Assembly (NCBI GenBank): GCA_033442325.1
Contig: JAWQFM010000003.1
Span: forward strand, 998,360 to 1,062,359
Direction: 5' to 3'
Length of the DNA: 64,000 bases
Source: Salpingoeca rosetta
Lineage: Eukaryota; Protista; Choanoflagellata
Made by a program: the position numbers and the translations under genes. Numbering within the stretch: position 1 is the stretch's first letter; the number at the start of each line of letters is the position of its first letter. The notes beneath the pieces were generated by a model. The model was not told the origin of the DNA and did no database searches. It saw only the letters and a list, made by a program, of their open reading frames with translations. Positions 14,272 through 21,766 of this stretch are shown here, piece by piece.

Positions 14272-14466
14272 TCAACGGGCGAGGTGGGGTGCGAGCGCAT
14301 GTGTGGTGTTGATGGCGTGTCGCCAGGCCGCATGCTGCCCAACACAGATGACGAGCCGGCGTGCGCGGGTGACGCCCGTGTAGAGGAGATTGCGGTTCAG
14401 GAACGAGGCGTGCTCCATCGTCAGCGGAATCACAACAGCCGGGAACTCAGACCCCTGCCCAGAGGG

Positions 14467-14565
<99 letters not shown>

Positions 14566-14568
14566 TGA

Positions 14569-14611
<43 letters not shown>

Positions 14612-14668
14612 AGTGAGAGAGAGAGAGAGTGTGTGTGTGTGTGTGGGAGTGAGTGAGTGAGTGAGTGA

Positions 14669-14707
<39 letters not shown>

Positions 14708-15356
14708 AGTGAGTGAGTGAGTGAGTGAGTGTGTGTGTGTGTGTACGTAAGCAAGTGGAAATGTGCGTTCAGATGCGCGTGCTTGCACGCGTGCAGGAAC
14801 AAGGTAGGTTGGATCAATGCCAATCAGAGACACGCAAGCACCCAACCTGTGCCTTGTGGATGGTGATGGCATATCCGAGTGCAAGCGTATCAAGATCAAA
14901 TGGGCTGTACCCAACAATCACATCGCCCTCGTGCAGGTTTGATGTTTGTCCGCGATCGAACTGAACATCCAGCACGTGGTGCCGCTGTCATCACCAGCGT
15001 CATCATGGTGGTGGCAGCAGCGGTGGTGGTGAGTGTGTCGCGGTGACGAACGGCCCAGCAGCGTGTGTGTTGTGTGGAAACTGTGGTAACTGTGGAAACT
15101 CGTGGGGTGGTGGTCGCACGGTGGCAGCGTGTGGAAACTGTGACACACATGTGGCCCACCTTGTTGGGAATGGAGACGACTTGGCCCATTTCGCCGTTGT
15201 ACACGTCCTTCTCCCTATTGTTCACCGTTTGAATCACCTGCACCCGCGGGTTGATTTTGAGATGACAAGGGATTTGAGGTGGGAGAGCGCGATCGGCAGA
15301 ACACGAAAGTCCCGCTAATGTAAGGGCAGCAGGCACACATGCGCAAAAGGCAATCC

Positions 15357-15431
<75 letters not shown>

Positions 15432-15847
15432 TGTCTGAGAGGCGAAAGCCGTGTCTGTTGATGGTGCGCTGGTCCTTGTCCTCGGCCATGTCCACAAATG
15501 CCCCCTGCAACATCGTGTTGAGCTGACGGGAGCTTGCAAGCCCGCGCTGGCGAAGCGGCGTCAGCACCTGGTTGAGTGGAGACAACGCACGGTGGAGCAA
15601 AACAGCAGGGATGTGGGCCGAGGGCGAGGATGTTGAACGGTAAGGGGGTGGTGAACGATCAGCATGGGTTGTGGCGACGACGCAACGTGTGCTGGCATGG
15701 GAAGAAGAAGCGTTAATGCACCGTCACATGCAATGGCGTCATGACGAAATGAGACAGAATAGGGGAGGGTGCGGGGGGGGGGCGTGGTTGTCTCGCACCT
15801 GAATGTCTTTCAGAGGATCAAACCCAAACTGGTCAGGAATCTGTTTC

Positions 15848-15904
<57 letters not shown>

Positions 15905-18900
15905 ACACACACACGTGCACAGGGAACGTTGATGAGTGGGCACAGCAGTGTCATGGTGCCACATATGTATGTTTGTACAAGAGTGTGTATGTATGTGCGT
16001 GTGTATGCGTGTGTGTGTATGTATATGTGTGTGTGCCAAGCAACGCATGCTTCTGCTGCACACCTCTTGCGTGACAAGTTCAACGACGCGAGTTGGAATG
16101 TCTTTATCCTGTCATAAACAAGGTTGAGGTGAATATAGGCACGATGGACATTGGAAAGCAAAGTTGGGGGTGAGCAGAACGAAGAAACACTCAAACGTAC
16201 ATGCGCAAGCACACACACACACACACACACACTCCCCATACCACATTGGTACACATGCAAACGCACTCACGCTCACTCACGTTACAGAAGAGGAAGGCAA
16301 AGTCTGTGTGGTCGGACGGGAGGCGATCAAGGACGTCAATCTCCACGCGTCCGCTCGCAATCTCGCGCGAAACAGTCTGGATGCGCGAATTGTTTGCTTG
16401 CTGCCTGTGAACCTCTGTGAGCCTGACAGGCGAAATGTCGAGCGTTTGCGCAACATTGAAGATGCCGCACGCCCCAATCTGCATGGTGTGTATGTGTGCG
16501 TGTGTATGTGTGTGAGTGTATGTGAGCCTGTGCGTGTGTGGAGTTGAGAAGGAAGAGAAGGGGGAGCATTACGTGCAAGCAATGGAGGTATGGGTATGGG
16601 CAAGTGGGCGTTGCAAGTGGGTGTTGCATATGCTGGCGGATACCGGCGGGAGCTGGTCTGGATCACCGATGAAGTAGATGGCCGTTCGCGGGGACAGGCA
16701 CCTTTCGCATTCACATTGACACACAATGAAACCAGCACGTCTCAGTGAGGAGGGTGGGGGTTAGGCACGATGACAGCTACGGCAGCAGCAGTGAACCAAG
16801 CGCAGACACCAGCCACGTCCACAGTGAACCGCACACGCCATAACACAGTGCACGCCATCCTCACAGCACAGCGCAACCACTGACTTGAGGAGCGGGTATG
16901 CCATTTCCACGCTGAGCATCGACGCTTCATCAACAATGAGGGCGTCGACGTCATCCACTTTCGGTTTCAGTGATGCCGGTGGCTCAACGTCCCAGTACAT
17001 GCCTGCAAGTGCACATGCACGTGTCGCATGTGTTGTGTGTGAGTGTGGATGGGCATGTGTGCTCTCATGTCAATTGTAATTACATACGCATGTGTGTTTG
17101 TGTGTCCATGTGCGCGCCGACGCATGCCTTGTTGTGCTCTGCTTGTGTGTGCGAGTGAGCAATGCGGTCGCCCAAGAGCTTTGTCAGTGCAACAGGGACA
17201 CACCGAGGCGGGCAAAGGAGTGGATAGTGGTTGCCTTCTCTGAGCTGCGCATGAGGGCGGAGGTGATGCGAGTGGCAGCACGACCCGTCGGTGCAACAAG
17301 GCGCACCGTCTTGTTCGCCGCCCTGGACGTGTGTGTGAAGGGTTAAGGGTCAGCGGTGTGGATGTTTGACTTACGCAGCAACCAGACGACACGCAAACGC
17401 AAACACACACACACACACACAGAAGCGCTGGGCGTATGGACTCACTCGAGGGCGCTGACGAGGCCGGCGATGAGCGTGGTCTTGCCTGTGCCGGGGAAAC
17501 CGGTAAGAATGCCAACATTGCAGCGGAGAAGAGATTTGACGGCGTTCTGCTGCGATGGCGACAGCAGATAGATGGCAGGGTGCCCCTCTAGCCGCAGCTG
17601 TGGACGGAAAAGGGGTGTGTGTGTGTGTGTGTGTGTTGGTGTGTTGGTGTGTGTGTGTGTTGGTGAGTGAGGTTGCAACAATGGGTGAGAGAGGTGGTGG
17701 ATGACGGGCTTGAATGGCACCGGAAACGTAAGTCATCATTGCGCTCAGAACACAGCAAGCGAACACACGCGTGTGCACAGCAGAGACATGAGTGCACATG
17801 CGAGACAAATGCAGAACCACATACGTCATTGACATCCCACGGCGGTGAGAGGCTTGCACGCTTCTTCAAGTCGGAGGAGACAAAGGTGAGCATCTTGTTG
17901 AGTCGCGTGCGCTGAACGGTTGACGGCTGTGGAGCATCGAGAAGCAACATATCGTCACCACGATTGCCGATGCTGCTGCTGTCACTGATGTCCTGGTCAT
18001 CCATGTCGTCGTGGAAGTGCTCGTCGAGACCAAACGCATCGAGATCATCGTCAGCAGCAAACGGGTCGTCACCGATAGCATCATCCGCAGCAGCACCCAC
18101 GTGAGCGCCGCTTGCGTTGTGCTCATGCGCCCCCGCTTCGGCACTGCCGTAGTTGCCATCTGTCGTTGTGTCAGCAGCACTGACGTGGAAGTTGGTGTCA
18201 GTGGCGCCATTTGCACCCGTGTGGCCACGACCGCTGTCGCTGCTGGTGTGCGAGACGATGAGCTCGGCGCTGTTGTTGATGATGCGGTGGATTGCCTCTT
18301 TCGTCACGCCCTCCTGGCCATCAAGACGCCTGCAGTGGAAACAGGGAGCGTACGGTGTGCAGTGAGTGCGGTGTGAGATGCGCCGACGCAATGACATACG
18401 AAAGACATGAAGGGGAGGGGGGAACAACCATGCCGCATTCATCACCGGCCTTGCACACACACACGCACACCACACACACACACACACACCACACACACAC
18501 ACACACACAATCACCTGCACACACACGCAATCACCTGCGCACACGTACAATCACGCATGGCTCACTTCATGACGTAGGAGGTGAGCTGGCTGAGCGTGAG
18601 GGAGGATTTGCCTGCAAGCTCGTCGTGGCGCAGGGCACTGAGGCAATGCCCCTCCATGATGTCATCAAGCGAAGGGGGCGTGTCGCGGTTCATCGTCGCC
18701 AGCCGCTGCACAGCCACCATGGGCAGATAGTTGTCCAGCGCAAGCACGCTGGTGGTGGTGGTGGTGTATGTGTGTGTGGTGGTGGTGTATGTGATTGTGT
18801 GTGTGGGGGGGGGGGATGGCGTTTGGAGAGCGTTAGGAAACCGAAAACGCTTGGCGCGCATATTTAAACGTACACACAGACACACAGACAGGTAGATCGA

Positions 18901-18936
18901 CTGGCAAACAGACAGACAGACAGACACAGACAGACA

Positions 18937-18999
<63 letters not shown>

Positions 19000-19441
19000 G
19001 AGGCGGTACCAGTATGGGTTTCGCAGGAGGACGGCCTTTGCATCTTTCCCAAACTTTTCGTACAGCTCTTGCGAGCAGAGCAAGATGTAGTACTCCTCGA
19101 CACCAAGACCCGCACACGCCAGCAGCATCAGCCGCTGTGTGTAGCGACCATCGTGTGGTGTGGTGTGATGATGGATTGTGATGGATTGTGATGTGAGTTG
19201 ATGTAACGATGTGTTGTGGTGGACGTGGCACAGGGCGAGATGTAGCGTGACAAGCTCAAACGAACGCACAAAACTATGCAGCCACACACGCATAGTGATG
19301 GTCAGACAGACAAACGAACCACAAGGGAGCGAAGCGTTTTGACGCGCATCCATTTCTCCTCAATGCCCAGCTGCACACACCGCGATAGGGTGAGTGAGTG
19401 AGTGAGTGAGTGAGTGAGTGAGTGAGTGAGTGAGTGAGTGA

Positions 19442-19521
<80 letters not shown>

Positions 19522-20201
19522 TTCAAAGGGTGCTGTGGGCGATGTAGGAACGCGAAATGCGCCCATCAACCCACGAGATAGTGGCGTCATGTGCAGGGTT
19601 GCACGCACCTCCCTGACGTATGGAATGGACTGCAGACCACCGCTCTCAATGAGCTCAAACACAGACACATTCGCCTTCTGTGCTGCCTCCACAATACGCA
19701 GTGCACGACGATGCTTCACCCCCTGATGGCAGTGGTGGTGAATGGTGGTGAATGGTGGTGAATGGTGGTGAATGGTGGTGGTTGAGCGCGAAGAAGAATG
19801 GTGCTGTCAAGCAAAGCACCGGGACGCTCTCACAGGCACGCAGACGCAGACACACACACGCACACAACAAGCAAAGGGACCTTGAAGTGGAGGAGGAACT
19901 TGTACGGGTCTCCGATGGACCGATCAAGTTCTTCGAGTAGAAGATGATTCTGATCGCGCGCAGCGTCCTTCCATTCCTTTGTGCTGAACTCCCCGCCAAA
20001 CTTGTCGCCGACGTGCACGCACCACTTTGTGCCGTCCTCGCTGATCTGCCACGACCCGCGCACGCGGATGGCCTCCGACAGGTAGATGGGCGGCGACACG
20101 GCGTGGCAGTCAACCTTCTGCTCCGTGGGCACGCGGGGGGGGGGAAGCAAGGGCGCACGTGCGTATGTGTATGAGGGAGGGAGAGAGAGTGTGAATGAGA
20201 A

Positions 20202-20241
<40 letters not shown>

Positions 20242-21250
20242 TGTGTGTGAGTGAGTGAGTGAGGGAGGAGGGAGGGAGTGAGTGAGTGTGTGTGTGTGTG
20301 TCTGTGTGTGTGCGTGTGTGTGTGTGTGTGTGGGATGTGGGGCGTACACCGATATATACAGGCATCACAGGCAATGCACATGTGCCATCGTGCATGGCGT
20401 GCACAAGATCGCAACACAAATACAGCACACGCGCACATAAGCAAGCACGTCGTACCCCGTGCTCCGTGTCCAGTTCCAGTACGGTGGCGCCAAGAGCGCG
20501 CTTGGGTCGGATCACATTGCACACGCGTGCAACAAGGTCCACAGGCTCGCCGGGACGCCGCGCGACTGTCTCCTTGACCGGCGTGAGCTTGTCTGGCGGC
20601 TTTGGGGCAGCCAGAGGCGGCGGTGGCGCTTGAGGGCCCGACGATGGAACGGCGACATCTGCAGCCGCACCTGCCGCTGACACGGGCACCGCACTGCCTT
20701 GGTCGGTCTGCTTGATGCGCAGAGTAAGGTTTGCGTATGGGGCCTCAAATTGGTTGGGCTGTGCATTGAACCAGCGCACTTGCCGCTGATGGCAGTCGGT
20801 GTGGCGCTGCTGGTGTCTGTGGTGCGGTTGGTGGTGGTGGTGGTGGTATTGTTGGTGATGATGCGGGTGCAAGTGCTGTTGACGGTGGTGGTGACGAGGC
20901 AGGGCCGTCAGTGGCTGTGACAGGCGATGGTGACTGTGAAAGTGCCGTGTGTTTCGGTGATGGAGCTGGTGCAACGGTGAGTGTCGTAGACGGGCGCTGT
21001 GGCCAGGACACGCCTTGCTTCCTTGCCAAGGGTTGCCAATACCAGCTGACGTAGCGCTGGGTGCTTGAATGTGTCTGCGCAAGTGCGCAGGACCAGTGCA
21101 GGTGGTGCTGGTGCTGCTGGTTGCAAGCGCGGATGCACGGCAGTGTGCGTGGCTTCCAGCTGTGGTTCTGGCCAAGCTGCGGACAGTGCCGACCACAGGG
21201 AGGCGAAAGGCGAGCAGCTGTCCAGCTGCGGCCTGCTTCAACGCGGCCAT
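14272..21250 (-). CDS. recD2: RecD2 (YrrC-like) SF1B 5'-3' DNA helicase with N-terminal extension, about 18 exons
   Basis: Motifs in order: [19 protein letters not shown] (HhH region), [101 protein letters not shown]. Confidence 0.9.
14469..14743. repeat. (GT)n/(GAGT)n compound microsatellite in the last RecD2 intron
   Basis: Directly visible. Confidence 0.95.
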
Positions 21251-21766
21251 GGAATCGGAAGCTTCCACGTTGTTGTGTGTGCCACACGACGACAACAACA
21301 GCAGCAGCGTGGAATGAAAACACAGCACACAAGCAAGCAAGAAGCCAACGAGAGAGAACAGAGGGCAAGGCGGCGACAAGGAAAAAAAAAAAAGTGGGCA
21401 CGAGCAAGAAGGCGAGTGATGAACAAGAAGGAAGCGAGTGCAGCTGTGTGTACTCAGTCGCCCTGTTGATGCTCGGCTGGCTGCCTACTGTGTACAGATG
21501 GGAGGCGAGGCAACAGGACGTGGGGCACAGACACCCAAGCAATGCGTGGTGGAACAAAGCACACAACAGCGGCGTGTTTGTTGGCTGTGTGAAGCTGCAG
21601 TTTATGCTGTCGTGACGACCACGCCATATCCACGACGCTGCCACGTCCTTCACACACACCGCTAATTCACAACACTGTTGCTTGCTTGGCCGCGCACACT
21701 CATTCACCCACAACAACAGCCAGCCAGGTGACAGATACGACGACATCACATCAGCGAGTCGCAGCT

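What the first reader, a model, noticed from the sequence alone, without database searches (positions are those of the whole stretch)
14272..21250. Intron-rich bacterial-type RecD2 helicase, probably horizontally acquired
Seen: all SF1B motifs are intact in bacterial RecD2 wording ([39 protein letters not shown]), plus the RecD2 HhH region (..KFG.DA..VL..NPY). These differ from my recollection of Pif1 and animal HELB motifs. About 17 host-style microsatellite introns show it is a resident nuclear gene, not contamination. Established: RecD2 acts at stalled forks and modulates RecA in bacteria lacking RecBC. Inference: a domesticated HGT gene, or a relative informative about the origin of HELB.
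Basis: partly seen in the sequence, partly recalled or inferred. Interest (0 to 1): 0.75.

Follow-up and report, generated by a model that had tools for sequence, protein, structure and literature searches.

The report
Choanoflagellate bacterial-type RecD2 helicase gene
A choanoflagellate (Salpingoeca rosetta) nuclear gene with 17 introns encodes an intact, expressed helicase of the bacterial RecD2 type, probably gained from bacteria long ago and possibly sent to mitochondria; the gene and its foreign origin are already on record.

Summary
Window 14272-21250 (minus strand) carries an 18-exon, 17-intron gene, all introns GT-AG. RNA reads and transcript contigs confirm 10 introns as splice joints and are consistent with 4 more; the last three introns lay outside the stretch. 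The 1092-aa product is identical to NCBI 'helicase RecD/TraA [Salpingoeca rosetta]' (PTSG_02367).

All SF1B motifs are intact. It has the RecD2 SH3 domain. Profile comparison shows a RecD2-type N-terminal OB plus helix-hairpin-helix region. The predicted fold matches Deinococcus RecD2 best. The nearest proteins are bacterial RecD2 (38-44% identity).

The only eukaryotic orthologue I retrieved is from the choanoflagellate Hartaetosiga balthica. A published table also names a Monosiga brevicollis one.

So an ancient bacterium-to-choanoflagellate transfer, followed by domestication, is the best reading; the donor is unresolved. This is not new: Matriano et al. 2021 list the gene as 'FOREIGN'.

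Added here:
- Both choanoflagellate proteins have acid-free, presequence-like leaders, suggesting a mitochondrial role.
- The relation to animal HELB stays open. Trees neither support nor reject a common clade (AU p 0.64). One intron (Q|GSE, phase 0) coincides exactly with a conserved HELB intron, but chance is about 10-15%.

The parts
20456..21250 (-). Exon 1 (coding part; aa 1-265). ATG at 21250; the 5' UTR continues upstream to at least 21399.
   Evidence: RNA contig pieces and the joint 20117/20456; frame check.
21071..21250 (-). Presequence-like leader (aa 1-60). The whole stretch aa 1-151 (20798-21250) has no Asp or Glu.
   Evidence: Composition count. The H. balthica orthologue also has no acidic residue in its first 45 aa; the bacterial median for the first acidic residue is position 3. 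Targeting is an inference.
20801..20998 (-). His/Gln-rich low-complexity stretch (aa 85-150), absent from the H. balthica orthologue.
   Evidence: Translation; the pairwise alignment with P0003 only starts at aa 231.
19881..20117 (-). Exon 2 (aa 266-344). With the end of exon 1 it forms the OB-like beta-barrel (aa 236-311; 19980-20545).
   Evidence: RNA joints; hhalign to the bacterial RecD2 N-terminus; beta strands in the model.
19609..19722 (-). Exon 3 (aa 345-382), start of the helix-hairpin-helix region.
   Evidence: RNA joints; hhalign.
19320..19370 (-). Exon 4 (aa 383-399).
   Evidence: RNA joints on both sides.
19010..19134 (-). Exon 5 (aa 400-441), holding the HHH_RecD2-like motif [15 protein letters not shown] (19012-19056).
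   Evidence: RNA joint 19134/19320; 3' boundary from transcript length plus GT-AG; weak Pfam HHH_RecD2 hit, E 0.084; hhalign.
18566..18748 (-). Exon 6 (aa 441-502).
   Evidence: RNA contig piece and the joint 18328/18565.
17825..18329 (-). Exon 7 (aa 502-670), the pre-helicase region. It contains a disordered acidic insert (aa 506-638; 17921-18319).
   Evidence: RNA contig piece; pLDDT below 50 across the insert.
17446..17597 (-). Exon 8 (aa 671-721), with Walker [10 protein letters not shown] (17475-17501).
   Evidence: RNA joints; Pfam AAA_30 and TIGR01448 positions 317-355.
17204..17322 (-). Exon 9 (aa 721-761), with motif Ia APTGRAA.
   Evidence: RNA joints; TIGR01448 positions 363-389.
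16885..17002 (-). Exon 10 (aa 761-800), with Walker B / motif II VDEASM (16917-16934).
   Evidence: RNA joints; TIGR01448 positions 408-433.
16644..16701 (-). Exon 11 (aa 800-819), with motif [11 protein letters not shown].
   Evidence: RNA joint 16699/16883; GT-AG candidate 16479-16643.
16281..16478 (-). Exon 12 (aa 820-885), with motif IV (EVHRQ).
   Evidence: RNA contig piece; 100% match to P0001 residues 820-885.
16064..16108 (-). Exon 13 (aa 886-900).
   Evidence: RNA joint 16107/16280; frame.
15799..15840 (-). Exon 14 (aa 901-914).
   Evidence: RNA joint 15563/15795; frame.
15430..15567 (-). Exon 15 (aa 915-960), start of the SH3_13 (2B) domain.
   Evidence: Pfam SH3_13. The 5' edge comes from the RNA joint 15563/15795; the 3' edge comes from GT-AG, frame and identity to P0001.
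15160..15237 (-). Exon 16 (aa 961-986), the SH3 domain with VYNGEMG.
   Evidence: Pfam SH3_13, 2.1e-12; boundaries from GT-AG, frame and identity to P0001.
14847..14984 (-). Exon 17 (aa 987-1032), ending ...YAITIHKAQ.
   Evidence: TIGR01448 positions 621-649; boundaries from GT-AG, frame and identity to P0001.
14455..14846 (-). Intron 17 (phase 0, CAG|GG), largely a (GT)n/(CA)n microsatellite. Its position coincides exactly with the last conserved intron of animal HELB genes.
   Evidence: Chance estimate about 0.13.
14272..14454 (-). Exon 18 (aa 1033-1092 plus stop), with GSEF and motif [13 protein letters not shown] (14356-14388).
   Evidence: Pfam UvrD_C_2 1.6e-12; TIGR01448 positions 639-701, 67 bits.

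Best explanation
This is PTSG_02367 of Salpingoeca rosetta, a nuclear gene that descends from a bacterial RecD2 helicase. It was acquired by an ancestor of at least the craspedid choanoflagellates S. rosetta and Hartaetosiga (and Monosiga according to the literature). Since then it has been domesticated: it gained 17 spliceosomal introns with host-style microsatellites, host-like composition, an N-terminal acid-free leader and low-complexity inserts.

The protein keeps the whole RecD2 layout: an OB-like barrel, a helix-hairpin-helix region, a pre-helicase linker, RecA-like domains 1A and 2A with all SF1B motifs, and the SH3-like 2B domain.

The gene structure, expression, family assignment and architecture are shown. 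The following are inferred:
- It works as a stand-alone ATP-driven 5'-to-3' single-strand DNA translocase and helicase. No RecB/RecC partner was found in the genome.
- It probably acts on stalled or recombining replication forks.
- More likely than not it acts in the mitochondrion, because both choanoflagellate orthologues carry presequence-like N-termini.
For: Gene model and expression:
- 18 exons and 17 GT-AG introns. Ten introns are RNA joints and four more fit the contig pieces and frame. The product is identical to the NCBI protein.

Family assignment:
- TIGR01448 RecD2 372 bits against RecD 185.
- AAA_30, SH3_13 and UvrD_C_2 domains.
- PDB order by sequence: RecD2, then RecD, Dda, Pif1.
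- Foldseek top three matches are Deinococcus RecD2 structures.
- The N-terminus aligns to bacterial OB_YrrC/HHH (hhalign 97.2%, E 4.6e-11).
- Motifs are conserved in the alignment with bacterial RecD2.

Foreign origin:
- 118 of the 120 best hits are bacterial or metagenomic RecD2-architecture proteins at 37-44% identity. The other two are the protein itself and H. balthica at 48%.
- Labelled bacterial loci from many phyla reach 32-40% identity.
- Viral relatives reach at most 36%.
- The choanoflagellate pair is monophyletic at 100/99 on the RecD2 backbone.
- No RecC and no real RecB were found in the genome.
- Published Alien Index 138 'FOREIGN', with a Monosiga orthologue flagged as HGT.

Leader: no Asp or Glu in aa 1-151 of S. 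rosetta or aa 1-45 of H. balthica.
Against: - The donor is unresolved. The pair branches from an unsupported deep part of the RecD2 tree, so 'bacterial' rests on similarity ranking and on phyletic pattern.
- The protein misses the TIGR01448 equivalog cut-off (372 against 500 bits), because the N-terminus is too diverged for that model.
- The eukaryote-wide survey is incomplete. Word-based searches score only 8000 candidates and list only 120.
- The published OrthoMCL family has the last common ancestor 'Ureukaryote', which means homologues are claimed in other eukaryotes.
- A common origin with animal HELB is not rejected.
- Mitochondrial targeting rests on composition only. No predictor or experiment was run.
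Confidence: 0.6

Rival explanations
1. One acquisition before the choanoflagellate-animal split. On this reading the choanoflagellate gene is the slowly evolving co-orthologue of animal HELB. HELB then diverged fast on the animal stem: a new N-terminal domain, an RPA-binding acidic insert and nuclear regulation.
For: - HELB is RecD2-derived beyond the motor. Its WHD region aligns to the RecD2 pre-helicase region (hhalign 97.3%), and after HELBs the next hits to HELB are bacterial RecD2.
- Choanoflagellates are the sister group of animals, so two separate gains of the same rare family in sister lineages would be a coincidence.
- The tree with choanoflagellates plus HELB held together has a log-likelihood 8 units higher than the free quick tree, and it is not rejected (AU p 0.64).
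- S. rosetta intron 17 (Q|GSE, phase 0) coincides exactly with the last intron conserved in Ptychodera, Saccoglossus, Holothuria, Amphiura and Lineus HELB. Intron 16 lies about 4 residues from another phase-0 HELB intron.
- No separate HELB was found in the genome, but the test is weak.
Against: - The careful tree does not recover the clade, and all deep nodes are unsupported. Both groups sit on long branches, so attraction is possible.
- The shared intron sits at a perfect CAG|GG protosplice site. I estimate chance coincidence at about 0.13, and the other three to four conserved HELB introns are not shared.
- There is no excess of shared rare residues.
- P0001 is less similar to HELB (46 bits) than a bacterial RecD2 is (69 bits).
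- The choanoflagellate N-terminus matches RecD2 and not HELB.
- The precomputed annotation shows no WHD_HELB domain, and there is no insert between Walker A and B.
Confidence: 0.2
2. An old eukaryotic gene, for example one derived from the mitochondrial endosymbiont. On this reading it was inherited vertically and lost in most lineages, so it is not a choanoflagellate-specific transfer.
For: - Matriano et al. assign its OrthoMCL family a last common ancestor 'Ureukaryote' and therefore dropped it from their final 175 candidates.
- A presequence-like leader fits an organellar protein.
Against: - Only choanoflagellate proteins appeared among the eukaryotic hits of two searches.
- No Alphaproteobacteria appear among the nearest labelled bacterial loci.
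- OrthoMCL families of helicases are often over-inclusive. I could not inspect this one.
Confidence: 0.1
3. The donor was a virus (a phage or giant virus) rather than a bacterium.
For: - RecD2-like helicases are common in phages (Atlas clusters).
- In the trees the pair sits weakly next to a phage-context protein P0211 (SH-aLRT 97, on a long branch) or next to viral contig L073 (50/30).
Against: - The best viral identities are 33-36%, and giant-virus MAGs reach 25-31%. Both are below bacterial RecD2 at 38-44%.
- The support for a viral neighbour is weak or carried by long branches.
Confidence: 0.07
4. Bacterial contamination or an assembly artefact.
For: None beyond the bacterial-type sequence itself.
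Against: - 17 spliceosomal introns, of which ten were seen spliced in stranded RNA reads and transcript contigs of three studies.
- The gene lies inside a multi-megabase contig of a 55 Mb assembly.
- Host-style microsatellite introns.
- An orthologue in another choanoflagellate transcriptome.
Confidence: 0.01

Closest known systems
Bacterial RecD2 (TIGR01448; Deinococcus radiodurans RecD2, PDB 3E1S/3GP8/3GPL; Bacillus subtilis RecD2/YrrC)
   Same: - All SF1B motifs.
- The same domain order: OB, HhH, pre-helicase linker, 1A/2A and SH3 2B.
- 38-44% identity in the motor.
- Best sequence and fold match.
- Stand-alone, with no RecBC partner.

   Different: - Nuclear eukaryotic gene with 17 introns.
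- About 225 extra N-terminal residues: an acid-free leader and a His/Gln-rich tract.
- An acidic disordered insert of about 130 aa before the motor.
- The N-terminal domains are too diverged for Pfam or TIGRFAM thresholds.
- Scores 372 bits, below the 500-bit equivalog cut-off.

Choanoflagellate orthologues: Hartaetosiga balthica EP00055_P015418 (P0003); Monosiga brevicollis XP_001750400.1 (literature only)
   Same: H. balthica shows 46-48% identity in the motor and 35% in the OB/HhH region. It has the same architecture and a presequence-like N-terminus.
   Different: - H. balthica lacks the His-rich tract and the acidic insert (937 aa).
- I could not retrieve the Monosiga protein. It is only named in Table S1 of Matriano et al. 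2021.
Animal DNA helicase B (HELB)
   Same: - SF1B motor of RecD2 ancestry.
- A pre-helicase region homologous to that of RecD2.
- One exactly shared intron position at Q|GSE.
- About 25% identity.
   Different: - HELB has its own N-terminal domain and the WHD_HELB annotation.
- It has an acidic insert between Walker A and B, and HELB-specific motif wording (GKGGCGKT, DECSM, GDxRQLPS, TIHTFQGSE).
- Pfam detects no SH3_13.
- It sits on a very long stem branch.

RecD subunit of RecBCD (TIGR01447)
   Same: The same SF1B motor and SH3 insertion. It is the second-best family and structure match.
   Different: - Half the score (185 against 372 bits).
- RecD has its own N-terminal domain (PF21185) and works within RecBCD.
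- No RecB/RecC was found here.
Pif1 / Dda SF1B helicases
   Same: The general SF1B fold and 5'-3' class.
   Different: Only marginal sequence similarity (Pif1 about 5e-5, Dda 2e-8). There is a partial PF05970 match over the Walker region only.

Membership tests
RecD2 (SF1B, TIGR01448) | Intact SF1B motifs I, Ia, II, III, IV, V and VI | tested here: met
   [52 protein letters not shown] and [11 protein letters not shown] all align with bacterial RecD2.
RecD2 (SF1B, TIGR01448) | Whole-protein score above the curated equivalog cut-off (500 bits) | tested here: not met
   372 bits, with only profile positions 317-701 matched. A bacterial control (P0004) scores 851. The shortfall is the diverged N-terminus, not the motor.
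RecD2 (SF1B, TIGR01448) | Closer to RecD2 than to RecD, TraA/TraI, Dda or Pif1 | tested here: met
   372 bits against 185 (RecD) and 96 (TraA). PDB sequence search: 3e1s 2.4e-36 against 1w36_D 2.7e-19. Foldseek ranks 1-3 are RecD2 structures.
RecD2 (SF1B, TIGR01448) | SH3-like 2B domain (PF18335) | tested here: met
   SH3_13 at E 2.4e-16, aa 930-995, full profile length.
RecD2 (SF1B, TIGR01448) | N-terminal OB (OB_YrrC) plus HhH / HHH_RecD2 domains | tested here: met
   Not detected at Pfam thresholds (HHH_RecD2 E 0.084). The profile-profile alignment to bacterial RecD2 N-termini is significant: 97.2%, E 4.6e-11, 197 columns. The model shows a beta-barrel followed by a helical domain.
RecD2 (SF1B, TIGR01448) | Stand-alone enzyme in a genome without RecB/RecC | tested here: met
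   recC: no match. recB: only a 22-bit Walker-type match. The search is exon-by-exon, so absence is not strict proof.
RecD2 (SF1B, TIGR01448) | ATP-dependent 5'-to-3' translocation and unwinding | not testable with these tools
   Inferred from family membership and intact motifs only.
HELB (animal DNA helicase B) | WHD_HELB domain (PF25894) and the HELB N-terminal domain | tested here: not met
   Precomputed Pfam lists carry PF25894 for nearly all HELB hits but not for P0001 or P0003. The local Pfam copy lacks this model. hhalign of the choanoflagellate N-terminus against the HELB profile gives probability 0.1%.
HELB (animal DNA helicase B) | Acidic RPA-binding insert between Walker A and Walker B | tested here: not met
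   The alignment shows the HELB insert after Walker A with no counterpart in P0001 or P0003. P0001's acidic insert lies before the motor.
HELB (animal DNA helicase B) | Monophyly with HELB in a phylogeny | tested here: inconclusive
   Not recovered in the quick or careful trees. Not rejected by the AU test (p 0.64), and the constrained tree has a slightly better likelihood.
HELB (animal DNA helicase B) | Shared gene structure (intron positions) | tested here: inconclusive
   Of five conserved HELB introns, one matches exactly (Q|GSE, phase 0) and one lies within about 4 residues. Chance for the exact match is about 0.13.
Pif1 | Full-length PIF1 domain match and closest similarity to Pif1 helicases | tested here: not met
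   PF05970 matches only profile positions 25-117 of 223 at 30.8 bits. PDB Pif1 scores about 5e-5, against 2.4e-36 for RecD2.

The most novel reading that the evidence does not exclude
The choanoflagellate RecD2-type gene and animal HELB descend from a single bacterial RecD2 captured before choanoflagellates and animals split. PTSG_02367 would then be a little-changed 'proto-HELB', and HELB would be an animal-stem remodelling of a bacterial fork helicase. On this reading the shared phase-0 intron at Q|GSE is a relic of the common intron-bearing ancestor.
Probability: 0.2. Interest if true: 0.7.

Novelty: already known. Interest (0 to 1): 0.35.

Why it matters
As it stands, this is a clean, well-documented case of an old prokaryote-to-eukaryote transfer of a DNA-repair motor. 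The gene became a normal, intron-rich and expressed host gene. However, it is already annotated ('helicase RecD/TraA') and listed as 'FOREIGN' in a published HGT screen.

Two things would make it matter more:
- If the protein is mitochondrial, choanoflagellates would maintain mtDNA with a bacterial RecD2, a helicase not known from animal mitochondria.
- If it shares its origin with HELB, it would date and explain the origin of an animal genome-maintenance helicase. Reviews still describe HELB as having no orthologues outside vertebrates or 'higher eukaryotes'.

S. rosetta is genetically tractable, so both ideas can be tested directly.

Tried and rejected
Handling of the joined protein:
- I built the joined (spliced) protein only inside a script, to check frame and identity. 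It was never sent to a search tool.
- Searches used exon references, or P0001, the database's own identical protein, which I found with exon 12 alone.

Searches and tests that led nowhere:
- Exon-wise PDB searches were too weak to discriminate families.
- A HELB protein and a HELB profile against the S. rosetta genome found nothing. They did not even find the RecD2-type exons, so this says little about absence of HELB.
- PF25894 is not in the local Pfam library.
- Counting rare residues shared with HELB showed no excess: 3-4, against a median of 1 and a maximum of 7 in an unrelated pair.
- Pairwise similarity to HELB showed no special affinity.
- Intron sharing with HELB is one exact match at a protosplice site, and overall about neutral once the unshared introns are counted.
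- Viral or giant-virus donor: identities are lower than bacterial ones. P0211, which groups with the pair in one tree, lies in a phage-like PolA/HD gene row and sits on a very long branch.
- The donor phylum could not be resolved in any tree.
- The held supplement of Yue et al. 2013 does not contain the Monosiga accession.
- Literature searches found no study of a eukaryotic or mitochondrial RecD2.
- Side-check of another TIGR01448 hit (L003): it is a Dna2-like helicase, not a second RecD2 or HELB.

Not used: complex prediction, because no binding claim is made.
Full report
**What is there**

On the minus strand of window 14272-21250 lies one gene. Open frames in the region contain pieces that match, in colinear order, positions 317-701 of the NCBIfam RecD2 equivalog TIGR01448. 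They also match Pfam AAA_30/AAA_19, SH3_13 and UvrD_C_2.

I laid two raw stranded RNA-seq runs and the transcript contigs of two other studies on 15400-21399. That stretch holds 14 of the 17 introns.
- Reads came only from the strand expected for a minus-strand RNA.
- Ten CT..AC (that is, GT..AG) joints were seen.
- A 3.8-kb spliced contig covered the stretch.

The contig pieces, exon lengths and frame are consistent with four more introns whose joints were dropped at repeats. Introns 15-17 lay outside the laid stretch and follow from GT-AG sites, reading frame and identity to the annotated protein.

The result is 18 exons, 17 introns and an uninterrupted 1092-codon frame from the ATG at 21250 to the stop at 14272-14274. 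Introns are full of (CA)n/(GT)n arrays.

The window is contig 3 of a 55.4-Mb, 68-contig assembly.

**Handling of the spliced protein**

I did not send it to any search tool. Instead I searched the representative library with exon 12 alone, by reference. The search returned a 1092-aa protein, P0001, with a 100% match at residues 820-885. P0001 is letter-for-letter my model and is named 'helicase RecD/TraA [Salpingoeca rosetta]' by NCBI and UniProt. All later full-length work used P0001 by reference.

**The observation**

There are two details:
- After splicing, motif III reads GDPDQLPPI.
- YAITIHKAQ|GSEF is interrupted by intron 17.

The count of 17 introns is exact.

**Which family**

- P0001 scores 372 bits on RecD2 (TIGR01448), 185 on RecD (TIGR01447) and 96 on TraA. 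A bacterial RecD2 control scores 851.
- The 500-bit equivalog cut-off is missed because only the motor (profile 317-701) matches.
- Against solved structures by sequence, the order is Deinococcus RecD2 (2.4e-36), E. coli RecD (2.7e-19), Dda, then Pif1.
- Pfam finds SH3_13 over its full length.
- The region before the motor is invisible to Pfam, apart from a weak HHH_RecD2 hit. However, a profile of the two choanoflagellate N-termini aligns to a profile of bacterial RecD2 N-termini (OB_YrrC, HHH_5, HHH_RecD2) with 97.2% probability, E 4.6e-11, over 197 columns.
- An AlphaFold2 model of residues 225-1092 (mean pLDDT 69) shows an N-terminal beta-barrel, a helical domain, a disordered acidic insert of about 130 residues and a confident motor. 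Its three best Foldseek matches are the Deinococcus RecD2 structures, followed by RecD of RecBCD, then Pif1 and Dda.
- No recC, and only a Walker-type trace of recB, was found in the genome.

So the protein is a stand-alone RecD2-type SF1B helicase with the full RecD2 domain order. It is neither Pif1 nor RecD.

**Relatives and origin**

With the motor of P0001 as query, the 120 best hits are the protein itself, one eukaryotic protein, and bacterial or metagenomic proteins with RecD2 domain architecture at 37-44% identity.

The one eukaryotic hit (48% identity) is EukProt EP00055, Hartaetosiga balthica, another choanoflagellate. It is also 35% identical across the OB/HhH region.

A profile search weighted to the N-terminal part found no further eukaryote of this type. 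A scan of one genome per prokaryotic species gave 55 loci from many phyla at 32-40% identity, with no phylum standing out. These included Verrucomicrobiota, Planctomycetota, Chlorobiota, Pseudomonadota, Actinomycetota, Chlamydiota, Bacillota and others. Viral contigs reach only 33-36%, and giant-virus MAGs 25-31%.

In maximum-likelihood trees (LG+C20+F+G4, RecD as outgroup):
- The two choanoflagellate proteins are sisters (100/99).
- They spring from the unresolved base of the RecD2 radiation.
- Their neighbours change with sampling. One is a long-branched protein from a phage-like PolA/HD gene row; another is a viral contig at 50/30.

The best reading is therefore an old transfer from a bacterium, less likely a phage, into a choanoflagellate ancestor, followed by full domestication. 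The donor cannot be named.

**This is already on record**

[quoted passage not shown] It gives:
- 3279 nt, 1092 aa and 17 introns;
- best nr hit Chlorobium phaeobacteroides RecD-like helicase, 40.4%;
- Alien Index 138.2, 'FOREIGN', with no metazoan hit;
- a Monosiga brevicollis counterpart (XP_001750400.1) flagged as HGT in an earlier screen.

The same row gives the OrthoMCL family a last common ancestor of 'Ureukaryote'. For that reason the gene was dropped from the authors' final 175 candidates.

I could not inspect that family. It keeps alive the possibility that homologues exist in other eukaryotes. My own searches list only the best 120 of 8000 word-sharing candidates, so they cannot exclude this.

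**Likely role**

The motor motifs are all intact, so ATP-driven 5'-to-3' translocation on single-stranded DNA is the expected activity. This is an inference from the family.

Both choanoflagellate proteins carry an extension in front of the OB domain that has no acidic residue and is rich in Arg, Ala, Ser, Thr and Leu. The acid-free stretch is 151 residues in S. rosetta and 45 in H. balthica (which begins 'MFSLLRGRVLVGSKS...'). In 254 bacterial RecD2-sized proteins the first acidic residue falls at a median position of 3 and at most 25. This is the composition of a mitochondrial presequence, and it agrees with a separate first-stage note on this window. No targeting predictor was available, so I rate a mitochondrial site of action as somewhat more likely than not.

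**Relation to HELB**

I retrieved named HELB proteins from vertebrates, hemichordates, echinoderms, a nemertean, a mollusc and copepods. HELB carries WHD_HELB, its own N-terminal domain and an insert after Walker A. The choanoflagellate proteins have none of these.

HELB's WHD region is nevertheless homologous to the pre-helicase region of bacterial RecD2 (hhalign 97.3%). So HELB itself looks RecD2-derived.

In the trees HELB is a 100/100 clade on a stem of about 2.9 substitutions per site, and its position is unsupported. Holding HELB and the choanoflagellate pair together gives a tree 8 log-likelihood units better than the free quick search, and it is not rejected (AU p 0.64). Both groups are long-branched, so this is not positive evidence.

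I then mapped introns of five HELB genes exactly. Five to six positions are conserved between ambulacrarians and a nemertean. The last of these, between Q and G of the motif-V 'QGSE' (phase 0), coincides exactly with S. rosetta intron 17. Another phase-0 intron lies about four residues from intron 16. The remaining HELB introns do not match.

All these junctions read CAG|GG, the classic protosplice site. In S. rosetta 3 of 23 such sites in this region hold an intron, so chance coincidence is about 0.13. Counting the unshared introns, the intron evidence is about neutral.

Rare-residue sharing and pairwise similarity show no special affinity. I leave a common origin at about 0.2.

**Verdict**

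The gene and its foreign status are already public, so novelty is low.

New here:
- the RNA-verified gene model;
- the demonstration that the complete RecD2 architecture is retained;
- the Hartaetosiga orthologue, which makes the transfer old;
- the conserved presequence-like leader;
- an explicit but inconclusive test of the HELB link.

Noticed in passing
proteins P0283-P0309: Proteins named HELB, or carrying WHD_HELB, occur in copepods, a nemertean, a mollusc, echinoderms and hemichordates. A 2020 review (PMC7290933) states that HELB has no known orthologues in lower eukaryotes and is conserved among vertebrates.
   Followed up: partly
alignments A6 vs A4: The HELB winged-helix region (GHTY...FL..YW..E..IA) aligns to the pre-helicase region of bacterial RecD2 at 97.3% probability. 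A 2026 HELB preprint says the HELB N-terminal region is not conserved in RecD2.
   Followed up: partly
L065-L069 (HELB genes of Saccoglossus, Ptychodera, Lineus, Holothuria, Amphiura): Five to six intron positions and phases are conserved across these HELB genes. Most of helicase domain 1A sits in one exon of about 400 codons.
   Followed up: yes
L064:168-8276 (Logan contig of SRR24540822): A dense same-strand row: family-A DNA polymerase with exonuclease, a small ORF, an HD-domain protein and a very divergent 1091-aa RecD2-like helicase (P0211). It is probably a phage or other mobile replication module.
   Followed up: partly
proteins P0127-P0138: A set of 906-907-aa bacterial RecD2 proteins carries a C-terminal DUF4186 domain fused to a complete RecD2.
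   Followed up: no
L118, L131, L082 (giant-virus MAG contigs): Giant-virus MAGs encode RecD-like helicases that fall near HELB in the trees, on very long branches and without support.
   Followed up: partly
window 17921-18319 (aa 506-638): An S. rosetta-specific acidic, disordered insert with aromatic-acidic patches (for example [20 protein letters not shown]). It resembles the partner-binding acidic tails and motifs of SSB/RPA clients. It is not conserved in H. balthica.
   Followed up: no
window 14469-14744: A 276-bp (GT)n/(CA)n array with interspersed TCAC units fills most of intron 17. Similar arrays sit in at least eight other introns of the gene.
   Followed up: no
L003:178-2013 (G000 contig 14, about 574-576 kb): Another SF1 helicase exon, with Dna2_Rift plus AAA_11. 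This is the S. rosetta Dna2-like gene, picked up only through its Walker A region.
   Followed up: partly
proteins P0204/P0246 (soil catalogue, 1070-1083 aa): RecD2-like proteins with an extra N-terminal region of about 500 residues and unusual composition. They branch near the base of RecD2. The source organism is unknown.
   Followed up: no
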